Assembly (NCBI GenBank): GCA_001179505.1
Contig: CDMY01001064.1
Location: 1-64,000, forward strand
Source: Vitrella brassicaformis CCMP3155
Taxonomy: Eukaryota > Protista > Chromerida
Direction: 5' to 3'
Length of the DNA stretch: 64,000 nucleotides
Shown here: positions 12,821 through 51,394 of the stretch, piece after piece
How positions within the stretch are numbered: the first letter of the stretch is position 1
How the letters are laid out: each line of letters opens with the position of its first letter
Notes under the pieces: generated by a model
The model's database searches: none
Told to the model about the DNA's origin: nothing
What the model saw: the letters and a program-made list of their open reading frames with translations, nothing else
Made by a program: the position numbers and the translations under genes

Positions 12821-15800
12821 GTGAACTCGATGGATGATGGGGTCCATCCTCACCCTTGTCTGTGCCCTCTCTGGCAGCTTCGTAGTCTGATCGGAGAGCT
12901 CCAGGGCTGGATGCAGCCATCGGAGTACATCCACGCGCAGATGGAGGCCTCGTTCAACCGTAGCGGCCATCAACACGGCTATCAGCACCCTCCCGCCACC
13001 CAGACGCACCATGAGAACGCCGCTGCCGCATACAGCGGCAACCAGGTGCCAATGGACCATCAGCCGGGGAGTCCGATGCCGACGAGTGTCACGCAGCCGG
13101 CTTATCGCATCGATGACGCCCACTCTCCTGACATGAGAAGACCTGCGGTCACCCAGGCCCAGGGCAGCCCAGGTCAGTTCTCGCAACAGATGGATGGTGA
13201 GTACGCGGCCGCCAATGGGAGCTACTCGTCGCCGACGCAGTCCTACCCCTACGCTCCCCACCAGCACCAGCAGCAGTATCAGCAGCAGCAGCAGACGTAC
13301 CCTCAGGTGGCGCCGCAGGGCCATGTGCTCATCACACAGATATATGACTCTCTCGTCAACCGAGGCGACCGCTCTCCCCTGGCCGGCAGCACCAACCAGG
13401 ACGCCGGCTACCAACAGCACCACCAGCAGCAGCGTGAGTCGACGACGGTGTATGGCGGCATCGCTCAGGGCCATCAATCGCCTCACTACCCTTCCCAAGA
13501 CCACACTCAAGCGGCCTCGTATGGACGACACCCCGGCACGCAGCAGCACCAGCACCAGCAGCAGCCCCAGTACGATGTCTACTCCCCTCCCGCCCAGCCC
13601 AGACACCCACAGCAGCACCCTGTGACCTATCCCCCGCCCCCGCCTGTGGACGACCAGCACCACCGATGGCAGCACGATCCCAAGGCAACCGAGCCATCCT
13701 CACCCGTGCCGCAGCAGCAGCAACAGCACCAGCACCAGCAATATCAGTATCAGGGCTATTCACCAGCGGCGGCGGCTACAGTAGGGGCCTACCAGCAGCC
13801 GAGCTCCCCTGCGCCACCGGCACACGTGCATCCTCAGCCGACGTCATCCGCCTATGAGTATGGCCACAGCCAGGGATCGTCCGTGGCGCCGCAATACGTT
13901 CACCAATACGCGCATCAGACGAGAGCAGCAGATGGTGGTGTGCCGGCCTCCCCACAGGCGCATGAGGGCCACCACGTGAGTCAGATGGGCGATGGGTACG
14001 GGAAGGTCATGTATCACACGGGGGACGGCCGTCTGGTGCCGGTGCCTGCTGCGGGTGGGGTGTCAGCCACACACGGGGAGATGGATGGTGATCGGCAGCC
14101 AGGGGTGACGGCCGGGGCGGGCGCTGGGGTGGGGGGAGGGGCGGGGAGGGAGGTCAAACAAGTAGAGGAGCAGCGGGATAGTGACATCTCCTTGATTGGG
14201 TACATTTCAGCGGCGCCGTATCGCCAGAAGGGAGAACAACAACACACCACCGGCACTGGTAAACAAAACGGGAAGCCGCCCGCCTCGTCGCTGTCTCTAT
14301 CTGTCTATGTGTTGATGTGATGTGATGTGTCTGACCCTCTGTGTTTGATTCATTCAGGTGGCGTGTCTGTTGGTCAGATGCCGGCGAGCAGCTCAGCTGA
14401 CGTCGACGGCTACAGCTATAGCACCCGCAACCACTCCCCGGCATACCCCCACGCCACCCCATCATACCCACAGCAGCCGTCCGTCACCGAGCAAGCCTAC
14501 CCACCCGAACCGCAACTCCCGCCCTTCCGGCCGGACATCCCCTCTCAACCGGTGGCGACACCGGCAGCTGCTGCTGCCACTGCTGCTGCCCCCTCCGTCA
14601 TCCCTTGCCTGTCGCAACTCGCAGCGATACCGCCAGTGGCCGTCCCAGCCACCGCAGGTGCCGACGGGCAGCCGGCCGTGGCGGCCCTGCCGTTGAGTGT
14701 GCTGCATCCACAGATGGTGGGGATGGGCGTCAACCCCCTCATCTACTACATGAACATCGCCTACCAGGCGGGCGTGGCCATTGGCTCCGGCAAGGGGGGT
14801 CCTCCGCCCCCGAGCACACTGGGCCCACGGCCACCGGCATACACCAACGGCGAGGAAGCCGGCGACGGCGACGGCGAGGGAGAGGGAGAGGGAGAGGGCA
14901 GCCGCTCGTCGGGCAGCGGCGACGACGATGACGCTGTCAAGGCCGAGGTCAGTGACGGAAGAGCCAGCCAACAAGGGCCGGCCCTTCATGCATCGCATCA
15001 TGCCCATTCGTCTCGTCCTTCTGTGTGCTTCTGTCTGTTTCGTGTTTGTTTCCACCAGGTGCGTCGTCGACTGCAGCAGGTCCATCCAACCATCCCCAGC
15101 AGCCCGTCGGTCCCAGATGGGCCTTCGGCACCACCACCACCACCCCGTTCCAGTAGCCCTGCCGCGCCACCCGTCAGAGCCCTCCCGCGCGCGTGTGCCA
15201 CGCCGAGTGACGCCAGCCGTGTGTCCAACGACCCCTTTGCCACACCCAGCAAACATAGCAGCATCAGCTCCCAGCGAAGCCCACCCAAGGGCCCAGCAGC
15301 AGCAGCAGCAGCCACCACGACGGCCGAGGCGGCGACGCAAAGCCAGCCCAACGGCGTCACAGGCCCACCCCAAGGCACCCCCCACACCCAACAGCAGCAG
15401 CCGGCGGCCGTAGTCAATAATCCGGTGGTTGACCCGGCAGTGTCGTCCCGCACGCGTACACGGAGCAGCACCGACACGGGGTCCGACATCCGTCACGTGG
15501 CTCCTCCCATCCCTCCACCTCAGGCACATCCTCATTCTCACCACCAGTCCCAGCCCCAGCCAGCGGTGGCCAGTGGAAGCTTCCCCCGCTCCAATGACAG
15601 CGGACCCCCCTCCAAGACCACCAAGGGAGCCCGTCTGAGCGGCAGGCATCAGGGCGAGGGCATCCTCGAGACACCCAGAGGGGATGACAGACGGCCCAGA
15701 TTCCGAAACGACCCACCACAAGCGCCGTCGCGCAACGAGCCGAGGGACAGACCCACTGTGCCACTGGGCCAGCGCGACGCGGCACCGACGGCAGACGCCC

Positions 15801-17150
15801 CAGCGACGTTCGACCCGACCAAGGGCCTCCTCCCTCTGCCGGACCCGCAGCCGCCGTCAATGAGCAGACACCGGGGGCCACCGGATCAGCCACAGCCACA
15901 GCCACCTCCTCCACCACCACCACGTGGGGCAGATTGGGGCAATACCAGCCCTCCATTGGTGTACGATGGCCATCCACCGCAGAGATATCCCCCCAATGTG
16001 CGTACTGGCGGTCGAGGGAGGGGGTTGCCAATGGGGCGAGGGGATCAGGCGCACGCTGCTGCGGGTGGTGGGTTGCCTGAGTGGGATGGGTCTGTTGGGA
16101 GCGACTGGAGCCGCGAGAGGGAGAGGGAGAGGGATAGGGAGAGTAGCAAGGAGCGGAAGAAGATCGAGGCTGATCGCCTGTTAGCCGAGATGCGCAAGAA
16201 GAATCGGCAGTGGGAGGAGCGATACAAGGAGGTCAGTCAGTCGAGTCAGCCGCCTGGCAAGGGGGGCCAGTTGATCGGCATGTGTGTCTTTTCTCTCATT
16301 GTGTATGCAGGTGCAGGAGGATGAGCGCAAGGCCAAGGAGGAGACCGCCACGGCCCGCCGGCTGGCCAAGGTTAGCTGTCTGGGCGTTCGGAACATCCCG
16401 ACAGTGGGACTCGACGAGACAGCCGTTCCGCCCTTCTCGCCCTCCAGCGCGGCACCTGCTCCCCCGCCCCCGCCACCCCCGTCGAAGCCACCGCCGCCGC
16501 CACCCACGGAACAGATGCCCATGGCCAAAGCAGAGAGGCGCCAAGTGGAGGCAGATACCCACGCCAGCCCGAGGGTCCCCATCGCCGAGGATTCTCCATC
16601 TGCCCAGCGAGAGCAGCTTCGCAGCGACCGTCTGAAGCAGCAGGAGCACCAGCAGCAGCATGGCGATGCGCCCAACCATGAGGGCGGATCGCATCACCAT
16701 CAGCAGCAGCAGCCCCCGCCGCCGCCACCACCTGCTGCAGCTCATGGTGGCGGTAGTCGGGACCATCTCTCCCCCCAGGATGTCGGAGAAGCTCGCCAAG
16801 CTCGCCATGAGCAGGGTGCCATTCCACCACCTCATCGAGGCGGCCGGGGCGGCTTCCACAAAAGAGGCGGCGATATGCGAGGAAGAGGCGGCCGGCATCG
16901 CACGGACCAGCAGCAGCATCAGGAATGGCAGAAGCTGCCACGGACGGAGGAGCGACAGATGAGGGGCGACGAGCGGGGGCCGGTCCATGCAGAGGAGAGG
17001 GGTCAGATTGTTGGTCGAGGTAGTGGTCGGGGCCGGGGCATTGTTGGAGAAGGGCAAGGGCGGGGTGCGATGCATAGCAGGGGGTCAGGGAGGGGAGGTA
17101 GTGGGGCTAGTGGGGGGAGGGGAAAGGCAGGGACCGATGACGACTGGTGA
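12821..17150 (+). CDS. Large low-complexity (Q/H/P-rich, coiled-coil, RGG-rich) hypothetical protein, spliced; 5' end uncertain
   Basis: Long ORFs 12821-14320, 14327-16324 and 16284-17150 join through GT-AG introns (about 14259-14357, 14947-15057, 16232-16310). Ends GRGKAGTDDDW*. Small upstream exons near 12600-12767 are possible. Confidence 0.75.
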
Positions 17151-31683: not shown

Positions 31684-32880
31684 ATGCGGCATTCTACATC
31701 TTTGTCATTTCCGGCGTGGTGCCTCCTTGCCTGTTTGTCTTTCATCGCGCCGTCGCTGGGCATTCCCGCAGTGACCACCAGGACAGCATTCCAGCCATGC
31801 GTTTCCCTCAGCAGCATCGACGCGCCAAGATCCGCAGTGCTGGCGAGGCGGCGGCCACGTGTCGGTGATTCATGGGCTCTTTCCTCAACAGTGAAGGGTC
31901 CGGAGCCTCGGACAATGGCTGCAGTTGACGAGAAGCCGCGTGCCGCTGCTGCCGGTGCTTCGGCAGTGAATGTGGATGATCCCGTGGCGATGCGGGCGAG
32001 GGAGGAGAACAAGAGAGCCAAGGAGAAGATCGAGGCCGACCTGAGGGATGAGGAGCAGAAGCTCAGGAAGCTCGAGGTCAGTCAGTGAGGTGCACACGAA
32101 CCTGCCTGGGGTGGGGCGAATGTGATGTGCAGTTGGACGTGACTGACTTTTCAAAATGTGTGTGTGTGTGTGTGAATGTGTGCAGCGTCTGATGAATGAG
32201 TTTGAGCAGCAGGGTCGGGATAGATGGACAGGCGCAGACAAGCTCGGGGAATGCATCAGGGACATCCGCGCACAGAGAAGGTCAGACAGTCACACACAGG
32301 CATAGCACACACCCCTTCCAATGGTTGGGTGTGTTCCGCCTGTTCAGGATATCTGAGAAGCTTCGGTGGAAGCTTCAGTTCCTGGACCTCAACATGGACA
32401 GACCCAACGCTGTCGAGGAGGCGGAGAGGTGCGTAGTGACACACAGGGACACGTAGCCAGCCACGCATCCATCCATCCATCCGTCTGTCTGTCTGTCTGT
32501 CTGGCGGCATCATGGTTGTAGGTATTACGAGGACAAGAGGATGGCTCAGAAGGAGCGGGAGCTCATCGATAAGTACCCCAACTGGCAGTACGAACTGGAA
32601 GAGAAGCTGAATCCTCTCTTCGGTGAGTGCGGTGCCAACCCGCCCCTCTCTCCCACCAAGACATCACACGCCATGTCATGACACGCCTCCTTTCCCACGT
32701 GGTGTGGCAGATACGCCCGTGTACAAGTGGGTGGCTGACGACGAGAAGTGGTCTGACGTCAAGCTGGCGCTGCTGGCCCTTCCCCTGGCGCTGGCCATCT
32801 GCTGGTACTCATACTATGTCAAGCAGGATGTCAACATGATACCACCGGGGGCCACGCCGGGCGGCATTCCGCCGTCCTAG
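31684..32880 (+). CDS. Probable plastid-targeted membrane protein of unknown function, spliced
   Basis: Signal peptide (WCLLACLSFIAPSLG), an S/R-rich transit-like segment containing AF, a coiled-coil, and one C-terminal TM helix (VKLALLALPLALAICWYSYYV). Confidence 0.7.
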
Positions 32881-33347
32881 GGAGTGGGCTGTGGGCGTGT
32901 GGTCGGACAATGAAGCTAAGGTGAGAGGTGTGAATCATCATTTTTTGGCCTGACTGCCTGCCTGCCTCATAGAGGCGTGTGCATGTTTGTGTGGAGTGGA
33001 GTTGGGTCATTGGTCTCACATCGGCTTTTCTGTCGCGGTGTGTGTGTGTGTGTGTGTGCATATGAGACGATGCAACTGACTTGTCTGTACAGAGAGCATA
33101 GCATCCCCTCACTCAATAACTGACTTATGTTTTTCGGTACTCGTGGCCAATGAGTGAATTCATGACAGCATTGGGGAGCAGGAAAATCCGAGAAGGGCAC
33201 AAAAGTCCTCACACCACATGCACTGCTGACACGTACGTAAACTCTATCAGTCCCCCGGCTTCCCCACTGATCAACTCAACTCACGTGCCTTGCACGCACC
33301 GAAAACGCACGACCCACCACCGATATATCAGGGCATCACTCTATTTG

Positions 33348-34406
33348 TCAGTCTTTGTGGTCGTCCTTCATCTCCTTCTCCCACTCCTGCGCATACACAC
33401 ACGCGTAAACAGATGGGTCCGATCTGATGTGATGTGTGCATTGGGTGGGTGAATGGGTGAATGGGCGACACACCTTGAGTGCCTCGTGGTATTCGCTCCA
33501 CTCTTTCCACATCGTAGCGGGGATCTCAGCCTCGACCTTGACGATCTGCATCAAACCCACACATACGCAGACAACCAAGCATCAGAGTTGTGTGTCTGTG
33601 TGCACCGCTCGAGCGCCTTACCCGCGTGACGAGCTTGAACTCAGACGTCGTAAACTGAACAACGAACACACCACACATGTAGAACAACGAACACACCACA
33701 CATGTATAGGCGGCCACGTGTGTGTGTGTGTTTGACCTTGACTTTGACTGGGCAGTCGTAGCCATTCGCACAGAAGGGCACGTGGGCCTCGCCCACGAAC
33801 ACGTGGCAGTCGTCCTTGGCCTGCTCATCAAACGACCTGCACACATGTGGATGGATGAGACCCCTCGGACGACAATCAATCCCACAACGACCTGCCTACT
33901 TCTTGGCGCTGATGGTCTTGAGGGCACAGATCAGGCGGTTGTGTCCGCTGCCCTTGCTATCCACGTGGCCGGCCTGCCAGCGAGCCTGATACACACACAC
34001 ACGCGCCACACAGAGAGAGAGTGTGTCCGTCCACGATCTTTTGTGTGTTGCAGATAGCGGCGGCTCACCGTGACATAGTCATCGTCGGATCCCGTGAGAT
34101 GGACCAATCGTATCGGATCTGCTCGCGGGAAATCAGATGTTAGAGTGACCATACCGCCTGACTCCTGAACGCACGTGTGACAAGCAACAATGCTCAGTCT
34201 GACATGAAAGCACAAGGAAATGCTACCTTGATGTGGATAGGCGCCGTCATAGCCATCCCTGCATGCCACAACAGGCGCATACTCGACGCACCGTGTCGTC
34301 GTGCCCCTAAACCTCTTCCTACCTCACCTTTGACCCGCTTTTCCAGTCCATCTGAGTCGACGATTTGGACTGTCGTCCAGCCCACAAACTTCCGGTTGCC
34401 CGCCAT
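33348..34406 (-). CDS. Small hypothetical protein (about 165 aa, 7 exons)
   Basis: In-frame GT-AG exon chain MAGNRKFVGWTTVQIV...|GGMVTL...|ARWQAGH...|SFDEQAKDDCHVFVGEAHVPF...|FTTSEFKLVTR|IVKVEAEIPATMWKEWSEYHEALK|EWEKEMKDDHKD*. Confidence 0.75.
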
Positions 34407-34437
34407 TTGCAGCTGTATTTCTGAAGACAAGAACGAC

Positions 34438-34652
34438 AGGGTTTAGGGTTCGCGGCGGGGTTTGGAATTCTCGCCGCGAATTCTCGCCGCGACGAGACGA
34501 AGGGGACTTTTATTCCTCTACACATTTTCCCGTTCTCCTGACGTCAACACTTCCCTCCAACCCTCCTTCTCCACTTGTGTTTGTTTCCCTCGCCCGGCGA
34601 TGTGAAAAACTCACCGTGGTTTTCTGTTTCCCTCGCCCGGCGATGTGAAAAA
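34438..34652. repeat. Cluster of short duplications in an intergenic/promoter region
   Basis: AGGGTTTAGGGTT (34438-34450), GAATTCTCGCCGC x2 (34465-34490), and a 28-bp direct repeat TGTTTCCCTCGCCCGGCGATGTGAAAAA at 34582-34609 and 34625-34652. Confidence 0.9.
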
Positions 34653-34658
34653 TTCGCC

Positions 34659-35976
34659 ATGAGGGCACGGAAGGGGGAGGGGAGACGGCAGGTGACCTCT
34701 CGCTTCCTCTCTCTCTGTGACTGTGTGTGCTGCAGCTGCACCACCCGGACAAGGGCGGGGAAACGGCGGCCTTTCAGCAGCTGGGGAGGGCGTACGAGGT
34801 GCTCTCAGACGAGCAGGCACGGGCCAGGTACGACGCCATAGCCATGGTAAGAGAAAGAGAGCTATCGGAGGTGCACTCACAGAATTTTTGGATACATCCG
34901 GCGGTTGTTTCCGTGTCTGCCACCGCGCAGGCCCACCACGGCCGCAGTTGGGAGGCCGCCCGTTTGTGGGAGCAGACGCCAGAAGCGGTGAGGATGTGGG
35001 TCGCATGGATGTGCGTCTGATGAATGCCGGTGTGTTGGCCAATGATGTACTTCTGCAGAGGGAGGCATTCAAGAGGGCCGAGGAGAAGCTGAGTGAAGAA
35101 GCGATAAAGAAGACCGACGCTGTGAGTGATATGTGTACCAGTCATTCAGGATGTGTCTTTACTGTTGTCCTTGTGCGGGCAGGTTCTCGCCAAGTGGGTT
35201 TTTTTTAACAGGGGGGATCAGCGCACCCTGCTGCCGATGGTGGGTTGCCTGAGTGGGATGCGCCCAATCCTGAGGGGGGATCGCACGACCACCACCAACA
35301 GCAGCACCATCAGCAGCAGCAGCCCCCGCCGCCGCCACCACCTGCAGCTCATGAGCAGGGTGGTGCCATTCCACCACCTCATGGAGGCGACCGGGGCGGC
35401 TTCCCTCATCACAACAGAGGCGGCGATTTGCGAGGAAGGGGCGGCCGGCATCGCACGGACCAGCAGCGGCATCAGGAATGGCAGAAGCTGCCGCGGACGG
35501 TGTATGGCGGCATCGCTCAGGGCCATCAATCGCCTCACTACCCTTCCCAAGACCACACTCAAGCGGCCTCGTATGGACGACATCCAAGCACGCAGCAGCA
35601 GCAGCACCAGCAGCAGACCCAGTACGATGTCTACTCCCCTCCCGCCGAGCCCAGACATCCACAGCAGCACCCCGTGACCTATCCCCCGCCCCCGCCTGTG
35701 GACGACCAGCACCACCGATGGCAGCACGATCCCAAGGCAACAGAGCCAGCCCCACCCGTGCAGCAGCAGCAGCAACAGCACCAGCACCACCAGCGGTACC
35801 CTTACAAGGTACCTGTACATGTGGCGGGGGAGGGGGAGGAGGGCTGGTATGGGGATTTAGCGAGCGGGAGGGTAGAGTATTGGAGGCGGGAGGGGCAGAT
35901 GTGGGAGGTTCACTGGGAACATGAGTCGTGGTGGTGGTGGTGGGCGTCGGTGGCGGCGGATTTTTGTTGTGTGTAG
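34659..35976 (+). CDS. Chimeric gene: truncated DnaJ J-domain fused to a scrambled copy of the 12.8-17.1 kb gene
   Basis: Exons 34736-34846 (LHHPDKGGETAAFQQLGRAYEVLSDEQARARYD) and 35059-35121 are phase 0 and splice to the TTTTTTTTAACAG acceptor at 35211, in frame with ORF 35245-35976. Start and end are tentative. Confidence 0.6.
35212..35790 (+). repeat. Mosaic segmental duplicate of 16040-16088, 16665-16947 (63-bp deletion) and 13444-13740
   Basis: Near-identical nucleotide blocks in non-colinear order, with junctions at GATG, CATG and GACGG microhomologies. Confidence 0.93.
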
Positions 35977-37291
35977 ACGGGAATGGCAGGGGACTATTTT
36001 TCCATGCTGCCGTCGCTAACCTGCCTGTCTGCCTGTCTGTCTGTCTGCCTGATTGCCTGTCTGTCTGTCTGCCTGTCTGTCTGACTGCCTGCTCGCTTGT
36101 CTGTCTGTCTATAGGTGTGAGCACAAAGGTGCAAGGCAGATACAGGCATGTCATGCAGCCAATTATGTTGTGTGTCGTTGTCTCTCTGTGCAGATTGCTG
36201 CCTCCATTTGATATCTGTGGATCTGTTTCCTCTCCTCGGAATGCGCAGCACGACCATGGCCACAAACCTCACTGACGCCGTAAGTGAGCCGATTCTCTAG
36301 ACATGTCCGTCTCTCTTACCTTTGTTGCCTCTCTGCTGCTACAATGGGAGATCAGGAGGCGAGGAGGGCCAAAGAGGTCAGCAAGTGGGCCGTCACACAA
36401 TGCACTGTCGCCATCTTTATAGACCTGCTGTCAGGAGACTGAAGTGTCTGTTTGTGTCTCTCTGTGCAGATTGCTGCCTTCATTTTATATTTGCCGATCC
36501 ATCTTCTCCTTGGCCTACGCACCTCATCCATTTGAGGAGGGCAGAGGAGAGACACACCCGCGTGGCGCAGGAGAGAACAGACAGGGTGAGGTGACGGCCA
36601 TTCATCACATTCTGATCAGTGCCACTGTGTTCTGTGCGTCTGCAGATGCTGCGGAGGTGGGGGTTGCTCCCTCCTTGAGAGCCAACGGCCGGTGACGACG
36701 ACCTCAGACCCCCACACATAAAGGCGGCTGCAGGAGCACGGGCAACAGAGGAGCGGCAGCGCGACGCCCGCCCTGGGAAGTTACGGTCAGACGACTTACG
36801 GTGGTGGTGGTGCTGCTGCTGCTGGGCGTGTCGGTTGGTGTGTAGCTACTATTGGTGTGTCAGTGAGTGAGCGAGCAAGGGCCTGGAGCGAGAGAGCGAG
36901 CGACTTCTACTCTTCTAGTCTATCTGGCTGTTCCATCTATCTACCTTGGTGGCTGCATGGCGGACGACCACACGCGATTGATTGCACTCATGCATTCATC
37001 CTAGGGTCTCTCGCTGTGTCTGTCCATCCATCCATCCATCAAGTGACAAAACTCCGCCACTCATCCAACCGCTCTACACAGCACTCACACACGCACTACT
37101 ACAGCCTTCAGAGGGTCATCTCTGCTGCCGGCACCTGGCCCACCGGCACCGTCGCGACGCCGATGTAGCCTTCTCCGTGATGCAGACGCGCCGACGACAC
37201 TGGCAGAGGCGACACACAACTGACAGACAACAAGACAGACACCACACACAAGACACACACACACACAAGCTGTCTCTTTCAGCTTCCTTTT

Positions 37292-40200
37292 TTACGTGCG
37301 ACGTTCCACCGACCGCATTTGGTTCTGAGCCATGTGTATCTGAGCATGGCCTGGCCGGTGGCCGGCGAAGCGCGTGATGGACCGGGGCAGAGCCTGTGGG
37401 CCGATCTGACCTACAGATGCAGTGGCTGCTGGTGCTGCCGCTGCCGGAGCCGGGGAGCTGCCTCGGTATGCACCACCTGCAGCACCGACAGGAAAGGAGG
37501 GCGGCATGGGCAGTAAGTTGGTCGTGCGGAGGACGTTCCACGTCGCATACGACCCACCCTGGCAAAGCACACATAAAGCGACAGTGCAGAGTATTCATTC
37601 GTTCTCGTGCCGTCTCACGTGTTGTTGCTGCATCGAAGCCTGGCCCCCTTGCCCGCCCTGCGACCCCTGAGACATCCACCACGCCGTAGGCGGCAGACCC
37701 TCACTCTGCTGCTGCTGCTGATGGCGCTGGTGGTGATGATGCTGATGGTGGGGAAGGTGCCCGCTCAAAGGCGGTGGCGAGAGCACTGCGCCCCGACCCC
37801 CGCCAATCCCGCCAACCTTGGGCGCCACGACGAGCGGCCCCTGGATCTTCATCTGCTCGGCAAATCGCCCCATGAGGCCTGCATCGGCATGCGAGGCGCC
37901 TTTCGGTGCTTTTGGTGTGGGGGCGAGTATGGCGCCTGACGGTTTGTCCATGCGGCAGAGGTCGTGCATGTACTGCTTGTACTTCTCGGGGATCAGCGGC
38001 ACCTTCTGCAGTGCAGTGCAGTGGGAAGGGGTGGATGGGATGCAAGGAACCAAATCGCATCAGCGCTGTGTGGGTGTGGGTGTCGTTCCCGCAGCTCCCC
38101 GACTTACCTGCAGCAGCCGCCTCGCCCGGCGCCTCTTCTCTTGCTCGTCGCTCGTCCCTCTCCTGCGATCCTCACGACCACTGACACACACATACCCAGA
38201 CAGCAAACCGAAGAGGAGACACAGACTCTCCAATGCAGTATAGCCTCCTTTTCCCGCTCGTGGCGCGCACCTCTCCTCTTCAGCATCGTCCTCCCTGTCG
38301 CTAGGTCCGGCCGACCCGCTCGAGTGGCTGCCGACCTTCAGGTGCTCCGGGATGGCGTCCATCGTCTCGAGCGATGCGTCACGAAGCCACGGATGGTTCA
38401 GGGCAGCTTGCACACTCCTGCAAGGCAGCCACACACACACACACACACACACACAGACTGCCCGCCTCCCAGTGGAATTGTGTGCTGGTGTTTACATCCT
38501 CTGTTGGGGCTGCACTTGAAGTAGCCGCATGATGAAGTCTGGCCCAAAAAGAGGAAGAAGGAGAACAGGACGGCGCAGAGAGTGGTGGCGGCCCACTGGG
38601 TGCGGTTGGGGTGGTGGGCGTTGCTGTGTGTGTGTGTGTGTGTGTACCCTTCGCGGCCGGGCTGAGACGGTCTTGCACGCCCAGAGCCTCAAACACGCGC
38701 TCATGGCGGCCTGCAGCCATACACACAGACACGCGCACACACACACAGTCCATCTCAACTACTTCCGATCTCTCCCGTGTCTGTGTATGTGACCTCTGCA
38801 GAGCTCGAACCACCTCCAGTCATCCTCGGGATGATCAGTGGGATGAGCGTTCTGACAGGGGAGAGAAGAAGACAAGAAACATCGGTACACGTGTTGTCTT
38901 ATGCTTTACGTGTATGCGCCAGTGTGTGTGGTCTCTTTGTCTGTCTGTCTGTCTTTGTGTACATCGAGGAGTTCGGTTCCGAAGAGGAGGTAGAAGGCCG
39001 ACCAGCCGAGACACCAGCTGTCCACACGACTGGCGAAGTACGGACGCCCCTGCACACCACCACACACACAGACATGCATGACGCACACGTGCTTGGTGTG
39101 GGGATGGCAAGACCGACCTCGTAGTGCACTTCGGGCGGTCTGAACTTCTTGCCGATGTAGCCCCGGTAGTCGACAGGCACCTCAACGCCGTTCGGAGCCA
39201 TCAAAAAGACCACAGCCTGACCCACACACCGCATCCATTACACACAGCACACAGCACGCCAATAGCACCGTGCTTGATCAGGCGTACCTGTCCGGGGTCG
39301 CAGATGCGCACGTGGTACTTGCCATCGGGCGTGAGGAATAGCAGACAGTTCTCCAGGCTAAAATCTTGCATCGCCAAACCTGATGCAGCAGTGCAGGACC
39401 AACAGACAGACACATGGTGAGTGAATGCAGTGTGTGGAGGAGCGAGCGTGTGTGCGCGTTGCGTTGTGCGTGCCCTGTGAGTGCAGGAAAGCGAGCCCCT
39501 CAGCGGCCTGTCGGAGGAACGTGCGGGCGTGCTCCTCCCGCAGATCGCCCCGATGCTTCCTCAACTGCACCATCAGTGGCAGCCACACACACACACACAC
39601 ACACAGAGTCAGTTCGTCTTTGTGGGTTCGTTCGTTCGTACGGCTGACCAGTTCGACAAGGTCCTCTCCCGTGGCAAGGTCACTCACCACGAAATGGCAC
39701 TTCTCGTCCTCAAACACCTCGCTGACGGCACGTATGACATGACAGAGACATACACGCCGTGTACCACCCCGTTTATTATGTGTCGTGTGGCTGCTGGTCT
39801 GATCCACCCCTCCCCAACCCCCTCCCCGACCCCCTCATCGACGCACCGGATGGACATGACGTGTGGGTGTCCCTGGAGCAGGTGCGCGAAGAACACCTCG
39901 GCCAAGGGGGTCTCGGGCAGCTGCCGGTTCTTCTCCTGCCTGCCTATCAGGTCCTGCACACCACACACAGCCATGACATGACCACGATCTGGTGCCTGCT
40001 ACGGTGGTGCCTTTGGTGGTCAGACTTGCCGACCTTGTGGAGGACTTTGATGGCCACATCGTCGCTCGTGACGTTGCCGACGCCCTGACACACCTTCCCA
40101 TACAAAGACGACTGCACGCACACACACACTCCGCCGGTAAGACGCATCAATCGCAGAAACACATGCCATCGGCCGCACCACACACTGCAAACGCCGTTTC

Positions 40201-51094: not shown

Positions 51095-51394
51095 NNNNNN
51101 NNNNNNNNNNNNNNNNNNNNNNNNNNNNNNNNNNNNNNNNNNNNNNNNNNNNNNNNNNNNNNNNNNNNNNNNNNNNNNNNNNNNNNNNNNNNNNNNNNNN
51201 NNNNNNNNNNNNNNNNNNNNNNNNNNNNNNNNNNNNNNNNNNNNNNNNNNNNNNNNNNNNNNNNNNNNNNNNNNNNNNNNNNNNNNNNNNNNNNNNNNNN
51301 NNNNNNNNNNNNNNNNNNNNNNNNNNNNNNNNNNNNNNNNNNNNNNNNNNNNNNNNNNNNNNNNNNNNNNNNNNNNNNNNNNNNNNNNNNNNNN
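51095..51394. other. Assembly gap (300 N) flanked by poly-G runs
   Basis: An N run with 20 or more G on each side. Confidence 0.99.

What the first reader, a model, noticed from the sequence alone, without database searches (positions are those of the whole stretch)
34659..35976. Young chimeric gene: scrambled pieces of a neighbour joined at microhomologies and fused in frame to a half J-domain
Seen: 35212-35790 is a mosaic of three blocks from the gene at 12.8-17.1 kb, in the order A (16040-16088), B (16665-16947, with a 63-bp in-frame deletion) and C (13444-13740). C lies about 3.5 kb upstream of B in the parent, so the order is permuted. Each junction sits on a shared microhomology (A/B GATG, B-internal CATG, B/C GACGG), none is at a parental splice site, and all keep the parental reading frame. 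Upstream phase-0 exons encode an HPD-containing J-domain that lacks helices I-II, and they can splice in frame using the TTTTTTTTAACAG acceptor at 35211. Established: serial microhomology junctions are the signature of template switching (FoSTeS/MMBIR). Inference: this is a recently born chaperone-fragment/IDR fusion gene.
Basis: partly seen in the sequence, partly recalled or inferred. Interest (0 to 1): 0.8.

Follow-up and report, generated by a model that had tools for sequence, protein, structure and literature searches.

The report
Patchwork gene copy beside broken chaperone gene
In the alga Vitrella brassicaformis, three out-of-order pieces of a nearby gene were stitched together at tiny shared sequences next to the back half of a chaperone-helper (J-domain) gene, but no RNA from it was seen in two transcriptomes, so it looks like a repair scar rather than a working new gene.

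Summary
Window 35213-35792 is a three-block mosaic of the Q/P/H-rich gene at 12.8-17.15 kb, in the permuted order A-B-C. The junctions sit on GATG and GACGG, and a 63-bp gap lies between two CATG. Random breakpoints give such overlaps with p about 2.5e-4 (6e-6 with the gap). All blocks are about 5% diverged, so this is a real second locus and not very young.

The J-domain piece (34736-34846) covers only Pfam DnaJ positions 26-63. No N-terminal half exists anywhere in the 64 kb. An expressed minus-strand gene starts only about 300 bp upstream, so there is no room for the missing exon.

The "newly born fusion gene" reading is not supported:
- Two spliced transcriptome assemblies cover both upstream neighbours deeply but give zero depth over 34601-35200, and only low-complexity scraps over the mosaic.
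- The public model (CEM40061.1, 252 aa) uses the 35182 acceptor and reads the mosaic out of the parental frame.
- Four of six frames are nearly stop-free, so an open frame proves little.

Best reading: a microhomology-mediated templated patch (MMBIR/FoSTeS-like, or a tandem-duplication or circle junction plus deletion) next to a 5'-truncated J-gene remnant, probably non-functional. This is a known kind of event, and a tidy example of it.

The parts
33348..34431 (-). Expressed neighbouring gene (178-aa product, start codon near 34405). Its 5' end leaves only about 300 bp before the J exon.
   Evidence: Spliced RNA contigs with CT..AC introns in X12 and X13. Called gene in L001 8690-9748. Exon translations.
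34582..34661 (.). Two copies of a 37-nt direct repeat (92% alike) in the divergent intergenic region. The ATG of the annotated model (34659) lies at the end of the second copy.
   Evidence: the repeat finder family D5; sequence.
34659..34691 (+). Annotated first exon (11 codons) followed by a 44-nt intron. Doubtful: it has no J-domain content, and the intron is shorter than the nine RNA-supported introns nearby (62-88 nt).
   Evidence: Mapping of P0001 onto the window; intron sizes from the joints table.
34736..34846 (+). J-domain exon: end of helix II, HPD, helices III-IV. Phase 0, preceded by a pyrimidine tract plus CAG and followed by GTAAGA.
   Evidence: Pfam DnaJ positions 26-63 of 63, E 2e-9. 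Own HMM: 60.6 bits, model 31-67 of 70. Sequence.
34931..34987 (+). Exon of the public model (19 codons, phase 0).
35059..35121 (+). Charged 21-codon exon, phase 0, followed by GTGAGT. No family match. A marine-sediment relative differs at 6 places within 35061-35079 and then departs from the reference.
35183..35212 (+). Two competing acceptors. The AG at 35181-35182 is used by the public model (exon starts at 35183, out of the parental frame, stop at 35675-35677). The T8-AACAG ending at 35211 gives an exon start at 35212 in the parental frame.
   Evidence: No RNA joint at either acceptor.
35213..35260 (+). Block A, a copy of 16040-16088 (3 mismatches in 48, 1-nt indel).
35257..35500 (+). Block B, a copy of 16665-16947 (11 mismatches in 217; indels +18, -63, -3, +3, +6). 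Overlaps A by GATG.
35496..35792 (+). Block C, a copy of 13444-13740 (13 mismatches in 297, no gaps). Overlaps B by GACGG.
35793..35976 (+). Tail of the in-frame ORF. It has no template in the window and a GT donor-like site at 35809. The stop is at 35974-35976.
12821..17150 (+). Template ('parent') gene: three long same-strand ORFs, Q/P/H-rich with an RGG-rich end. No Pfam family and no word-search relatives in the length ranges searched.

Best explanation
The locus is a structural scar in the nuclear genome of Vitrella brassicaformis CCMP3155 (contig CDMY01001064.1), not an established gene.

A J-protein gene survives only from the 3' end of an intron onwards: the HPD loop, helices III-IV and one or two small exons.

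Right behind it lies a 580-bp patch copied from three stretches of a low-complexity gene 18-22 kb upstream on the same strand. The stretches were joined at 4-5 nt microhomologies in the order A-B-C, where C is the most upstream in the template.

The most likely origin (inferred) is repair of a break or collapsed fork by microhomology-primed copying with repeated template switches. That would be MMBIR/FoSTeS or polymerase-theta-like synthesis-dependent end joining.

The patch and the J remnant are probably not expressed at a meaningful level. A J-domain without helix I and most of helix II should not form the helix II-III hairpin that contacts Hsp70.

Shown: the mosaic, the microhomologies, the truncation, and the lack of RNA contigs. 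Inferred: a single-event origin, the repair pathway, and non-function.
For: - Mosaic and junctions. Microhomology beyond chance: p about 2.5e-4 for the two junctions, 6e-6 with the internal gap.
- Uniform divergence of the blocks (6.3, 5.1 and 4.4%) fits one event.
- The diverged sequence, plus an independent DNA contig over 33831-35334, shows a real second locus.
- J-domain limited to profile positions 26-63. No N-terminal half in the 64 kb. The expressed minus-strand gene reaches 34431.
- RNA contigs: depth 0 over 34601-35200 in X12 and X13 against 150-670 and 20-60 for the neighbours. Pieces on 35200-36000 all end in unlike CAG-type sequence.
- The public model reads the patch out of frame.
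- Stop-poor in four of six frames.
- C block: 5 synonymous and 8 non-synonymous differences. Codon-position bias is weak overall, 8/5/14, p 0.10.
- No TIRs or target-site duplication.
- No relatives of the in-frame ORF among proteins of 110-348 aa.
Against: - Both junctions and all indels in B keep the parental frame.
- The J exon is perfectly intact (60.6 bits, HPD present).
- A strong pyrimidine-rich acceptor lies exactly one base before block A, and all upstream exons are phase 0, so an in-frame product is possible on paper.
- The locus sits next to an active divergent promoter.
- Logan contigs show presence, not absence, and only two RNA data sets were laid.
- The B/C junction was not seen in a listed piece.
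- An unexplained X3 joint (35182 to 35551) and a metagenome contig that leaves the reference after about 35060 hint at structural variants I could not read.
Confidence: 0.62

Rival explanations
1. A nascent chimeric gene. It would be transcribed from the divergent promoter at about 34.5 kb and spliced 34846>35059 and 35121>35212. The product would be a half J-domain fused to a Q/H/P-rich disordered tail copied from the neighbour, expressed only weakly or under conditions not sampled.
For: - In-frame junctions and indels.
- Phase-0 exons and good splice signals.
- Intact HPD exon.
- The ORF is open from 35212 to 35976.
- The public annotation calls a gene here.
Against: - No RNA contig over the J exons or unique to the mosaic in two transcriptomes.
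- The J-domain lacks positions 1-25.
- The chance of two in-frame junctions is 1 in 9, and the indels may be the parent's.
- Four of six frames are open anyway.
- Substitutions are near neutral.
Confidence: 0.12
2. The public 252-aa model is right. The gene would be expressed using the 35182 acceptor, and the copied blocks would be read in a new frame, giving a novel S/T/R-rich tail behind the half J-domain.
For: The model exists as CEM40061.1 / A0A0G4H844. Its introns of 84, 71 and 61 nt fit the local range of 62-88 nt.
Against: - No RNA support for any of its introns.
- Its first intron is only 44 nt, and its ATG lies in a repeated promoter-like element.
- The tail is an out-of-frame reading that is also open in the parent.
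- The protein is the sole member of its 90%-identity cluster, and only J-domain relatives at 71% identity or less turned up.
Confidence: 0.1
3. The same non-functional patch, but a different route. A tandem duplication or an excised circle of parent segment 13444-16947 made the single head-to-tail junction (16947 joined to 13444 on GACGG). A fragment spanning that junction was then inserted at 35.2 kb, with one or two microhomology deletions (16089-16664 and the 63 bp) at that time or later. No serial replicative template switching is needed.
For: The permuted order is exactly what one head-to-tail junction gives. All blocks share the parent's orientation. The deletions are flanked by 4-nt repeats, as in end joining.
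Against: - No tandem duplicate is left at the parent.
- The insertion still needs two more joints at 35213 and 35792.
- Uniform divergence fits either route, so nothing here separates them.
Confidence: 0.3
4. Assembly artefact: the short-read assembler chained low-complexity CAG-rich pieces of the parent into a false mosaic.
For: - The region is CAG-rich.
- The Logan contig of the DNA run breaks at 35334.
- The B/C junction was not among the listed pieces.
- One odd joint runs from 35182 to 35551.
Against: - The copy differs from the parent at 27 of 562 aligned bases plus six indels, which a chimeric join of parental reads cannot produce.
- A contig from an independent study spans the J exon through the A/B junction with no difference.
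- Runs from three studies hold 0.88-0.89 of the sampled words of 33800-36800.
Confidence: 0.03

Closest known systems
Complex rearrangements by microhomology-mediated break-induced replication / fork stalling and template switching (Hastings et al. 2009, PMC2621351; yeast segmental duplications from broken forks, PMC2518615)
   Same: Several discontinuous stretches copied from nearby DNA, joined at 4-5 nt microhomologies, order not collinear with the template, and no long homology at the joints.
   Different: The scale is very small (48-297 bp blocks, 580 bp in all), closer to templated insertions at repaired breaks than to the kb-Mb events for which the models were made. All blocks are in direct orientation. 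A single-event origin is inferred, not shown.
Chimeric new genes made by chromosomal rearrangement (for example Drosophila yakuba, PMC6776367)
   Same: Fragments of two unrelated genes are brought together so that an open reading frame runs across them.
   Different: Those cases are defined by transcription of the new arrangement. Here no transcript was found in two transcriptomes, and one partner is a non-viable half domain.
Gene-fragment capture by Pack-MULEs or Helitrons (from my own knowledge of plant genomes)
   Same: A patchwork of fragments of host genes at a new site, sometimes annotated as a gene.
   Different: No terminal inverted repeats, target-site duplication or Helitron ends lie around the patch. 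The flanks are single-copy within the window.
J-domain proteins (Pfam PF00226)
   Same: HPD tripeptide and helices III-IV, 57-71% identical to ordinary J-domains, mostly in small proteins of about 80-375 aa.
   Different: It lacks helix I and most of helix II (profile positions 1-25), so it is a fragment and not a member with a complete domain.

Membership tests
J-domain (DnaJ, PF00226) | HPD tripeptide between helices II and III | tested here: met
   HPD at 34742-34750. Pfam hit of 37.7 bits, above the 27.8 cut-off.
J-domain (DnaJ, PF00226) | Complete four-helix domain, including helix I and the basic helix II that contacts Hsp70 | tested here: not met
   Only profile positions 26-63 of 63 are matched. 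My own HMM with --max finds no match to model positions 1-30 in any of six frames of the 64 kb. An expressed minus-strand gene occupies the DNA from 34431 downwards.
MMBIR/FoSTeS-type complex rearrangement | Two or more breakpoint junctions with short microhomology and no long homology | tested here: met
   GATG, GACGG and CATG overlaps. Chance is 0.026 for a microhomology of 4 or more and 0.0095 for 5 or more.
MMBIR/FoSTeS-type complex rearrangement | Templates close by, copied discontinuously and out of order | tested here: met
   The blocks come from 16040-16088, 16665-16947 and 13444-13740, which lie 18-22 kb upstream on the same strand, in the order A-B-C.
MMBIR/FoSTeS-type complex rearrangement | All junctions made in one replicative event | not testable with these tools
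   Uniform block divergence of 4.4-6.3% is compatible with this but does not prove it. A tandem or circle junction plus deletions fits equally well.
Processed retrocopy | Junctions at parental exon borders, loss of introns, poly(A) tail | tested here: not met
   No GT or AG lies flush with any block end within the microhomology range. The B-to-C step goes backwards. There is no A-run after 35792.
Transposon-mediated gene-fragment capture (Pack-MULE, Helitron) | Terminal repeats or ends and a target-site duplication around the captured fragments | tested here: not met
   Only CAG/CTG low-complexity inverted matches occur in 34300-37600. There is no duplication at 35213 or 35792.
New (chimeric) gene | A transcript that spans the fusion | tested here: not met
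   Depth is 0 over 34601-35200, with no joint at 34846, 35121, 35182 or 35211 in RNA contig sets X12 and X13. Contigs cannot prove absence of rare RNA.
New (chimeric) gene | Selective constraint on the new reading frame | tested here: inconclusive
   C block has 5 synonymous and 8 non-synonymous differences. Codon positions are 8/5/14, p 0.10. Without an outgroup the changes cannot be assigned to the copy or the parent.

The most novel reading that the evidence does not exclude
The patch is a gene in the making. The active divergent promoter at about 34.5 kb would occasionally drive a transcript that joins a half J-domain (HPD loop plus helices III-IV) in frame to a Q/H/P-rich disordered segment borrowed from the neighbour, and the frame-preserving junctions would reflect early selection. 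It would be a dated, mechanistically transparent birth of a chimeric gene by serial template switching in a free-living relative of apicomplexans.
Probability: 0.1. Interest if true: 0.55.

Novelty: new member of a known kind. Interest (0 to 1): 0.3.

Why it matters
The locus is a clean, base-resolved example of a microhomology-joined, out-of-order templated patch in a chromerid alga. Nothing on such repair scars in this lineage turned up in my one literature search on Vitrella. It also shows how automatic annotation can turn such a scar into a "J domain-containing protein". If transcripts were found, it would be a datable case of chimeric gene birth. As it stands, it is mainly useful as a marker of the repair pathways active in this lineage and as a caution about the annotation.

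Tried and rejected
- **Missing J-domain exon.** I looked for it with a regular-expression scan of six frames and with a J-domain HMM built from 50 hits. Nothing was found.
- **Intact parental J gene.** An exhaustive profile search with the 40-aa exon returned the locus's own public model at 100%. The best other hits were 57-71% identical, and none of the ten I looked up was from Vitrella. Clustering at 50% could still hide a paralogue.
- **Relatives by word search.** Searches with the in-frame mosaic ORF and with parent ORF2 and ORF1 gave no hits. The length filter (0.55-1.75x) means the parent's own annotated protein, probably longer than 1164 aa, could not be seen. I therefore could not obtain the parent's public gene model.
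- **Transposon capture.** No TIRs or TSD were found.
- **Other templates in the window for the flanks 34432-35212 and 35793-37100.** Only microsatellite matches turned up.
- **Different ages for the blocks.** Divergences do not differ.
- **Earlier notes of this scan.** Word searches found nothing on similar mosaics.
- **Joined spliced models.** Exons were searched one by one by reference, so the joined in-frame model itself was never searched or folded.

Full report
**What the window is.** An exact look-up of the top hit of a protein search placed the finding on contig CDMY01001064.1 of Vitrella brassicaformis CCMP3155, with contig coordinates equal to window coordinates. Earlier notes of this scan had already called the genome chromerid or Vitrella-type. 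The genome is about 59% G+C and rich in CAG runs.

**The observation.** blastn of 34401-36200 against the rest of the window gives four strong hits and otherwise only low-complexity noise. Local alignment and a junction print-out resolve them:
- Block A: 35213-35260 = 16040-16088.
- Block B: 35257-35500 = 16665-16947.
- Block C: 35496-35792 = 13444-13740.

A and B overlap on GATG, and B and C overlap on GACGG. The 63-bp gap inside B lies between two CATG. C lies 3.5 kb upstream of B in the template, so the order is permuted. All blocks keep the template's orientation.

The two junctions together therefore have p about 2.5e-4, or 6e-6 with the internal gap. None of the block ends, within the slack the microhomology allows, abuts a GT or AG in the parent, and one step goes backwards. 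The joins were therefore made on DNA, not by splicing.

**Real or artefact.** The copy differs from the parent at 27 of 562 aligned bases (A 3/48, B 11/217, C 13/297). A false join of parental reads cannot create that. Runs from three studies hold 0.88-0.89 of the sampled words of 33800-36800. A contig of a DNA run from a study other than the 2012-13 one spans 33831-35334 with no difference, which covers the J exon, both candidate acceptors and the A/B junction. De Bruijn contigs break further on, where the copy and the parent share long identical runs, and the B/C junction was not among the listed pieces. One joint in that run (35182 to 35551, letters in between unknown) remains unexplained.

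**The J-domain.** Translation of 34727-34846 hits Pfam DnaJ above its cut-off, but only profile positions 26-63 of 63. A J-domain HMM that I built from 50 hits and ran without filters over all six frames of the 64 kb finds only 34736-34846 (model positions 31-67 of 70). Nothing resembles the first 30 positions, and a motif scan agrees.

The match starts exactly after a pyrimidine tract plus CAG, so the remnant begins at an old intron's 3' end. There is no room for the missing exon. Spliced RNA contigs define a minus-strand gene whose first exon reaches 34431, with its start codon near 34405.

From established knowledge of J-domains, helix II and the HPD loop form the Hsp70-contacting face, and helices II-III form the core hairpin. 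A fragment without helix I and most of helix II is not expected to work as a J-domain. That is inference.

The exhaustive search with the exon found the locus's own public model at 100%. The best other J-domain hits were 57-71% identical, and none of the ten I looked up was from Vitrella. I therefore saw no recent intact parental J gene. That favours a resident gene broken in place, although clustering at 50% could hide a paralogue.

**Is it a gene?** The public annotation has a 252-aa protein here: CEM40061.1, UniProt A0A0G4H844, "J domain-containing protein", the sole member of its cluster. Mapped back, its exons are 34659-34691, 34736-34846, 34931-34987, 35059-35121 and 35183-35677.

Its first intron is 44 nt, against 62-88 nt for nine RNA-supported introns nearby. 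Its ATG sits in the second copy of a 37-nt repeat.

Neither model has RNA support. In the two runs that proved to be transcriptomes (spliced contigs, X12 and X13), the neighbours at 32.0-34.4 kb have word depths of 150-670 and 20-60. The bins from 34601 to 35200 have depth 0, there is no joint at any proposed splice site, and the few pieces on 35200-36000 all run on into unlike CAG-type sequence. Contigs show presence and not absence, so very weak or conditional expression is not excluded.

**Frame preservation.** It is weaker evidence than it looks:
- Two in-frame junctions happen by chance 1 time in 9.
- The multiple-of-three indels may have arisen in the parent, which is under selection, or by triplet slippage.
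- Across 35212-35792 four of six frames have at most one stop.
- In block C there are 5 synonymous and 8 non-synonymous codon differences.
- Over all blocks the codon positions are hit 8, 5 and 14 times (p 0.10). That fits constraint on the parent alone.

**Origin.** No terminal repeats or target-site duplication flank the patch, and the flanks have no other template in the window. Equal divergence of the three blocks fits a single event about 5% divergence ago.

The commonest reading of serial microhomology junctions with nearby templates is replicative template switching: MMBIR/FoSTeS (PMC2621351), with broken-fork segmental duplications in yeast as a related case (PMC2518615). At this small scale, synthesis-dependent microhomology end joining is also possible. 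A single head-to-tail junction (tandem duplication or excised circle, 16947 joined to 13444) plus a microhomology deletion would give the same order. My data cannot separate these routes.

**A hint from the field.** A marine-sediment metagenome holds near-identical DNA. One contig covers 34426-34713 and another covers 34797-35110. The second accumulates six differences within 35061-35079 and then continues for 77 letters unlike the reference. The 5' truncation thus seems to be shared with wild relatives, whereas the sequence just upstream of the patch may differ. I could not read that contig.

**Limits.**
- The parent's public gene model could not be fetched because of the length filter of the word search.
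- Its ORFs have no Pfam family.
- Only two RNA data sets were laid, and as contigs.
- Exons were searched singly by reference. The joined spliced model was not searched or folded.

**Verdict.** The mechanism signature is supported, though template switching is not the only route. The claim of gene birth is not supported. The locus is best read as a microhomology-mediated templated patch next to a 5'-truncated J-gene remnant, and it is probably non-functional.

Noticed in passing
window 34582-34661: Two copies of a 37-nt motif, 43 nt apart and 92% alike, lie in the roughly 250-bp divergent intergenic region between the expressed minus-strand gene and the annotated J model. They may be a promoter element. 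The ATG of the annotated model is created in the second copy only.
   Followed up: partly
window 32001-34431: Two well-expressed small genes converge: a plus-strand gene with exons up to about 33382 and a minus-strand gene with exons 33473-34431. One RNA contig (X13, 1937 nt) runs through both, so their 3' ends overlap or abut.
   Followed up: no
window 35182-35551: One contig of DNA run X3 (depth 41, close to the single-copy level) joins 35182 to 35551, with unknown letters in between. It could be a structural variant, a second related locus, or an effect of repeat masking.
   Followed up: no
window 34797-35110: A 2025 marine-sediment metagenome (X9) carries near-identical Vitrella-like DNA at 3-5x depth. 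Its contig leaves the reference after about 35060-35110, so it may be a different allele just upstream of the patch.
   Followed up: no
window 36169-36232 and 36445-36508: A 64-nt direct repeat (80% alike), each copy starting with a pyrimidine tract plus CAG. The X3 contig over 36113-36526 shows 7 differences from the window, which suggests another copy elsewhere or strain variation. No RNA contigs lie here.
   Followed up: no
window 36013-36116: A (CTGT/CTGC)n microsatellite of about 100 bp lies downstream of the ORF. Similar tracts occur at 20.5, 26.2, 49.7, 51.8 and 57.6 kb.
   Followed up: no
window 12821-17150: The template gene is a long Q/P/H-rich ORF chain with an RGG-rich C-terminal end. 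It has no Pfam family and no relatives in three word searches (length-limited). It also has long open frames on the opposite strand, as expected for this base composition.
   Followed up: partly
window 51095-51394: A run of 300 N, which is an assembly gap.
   Followed up: no
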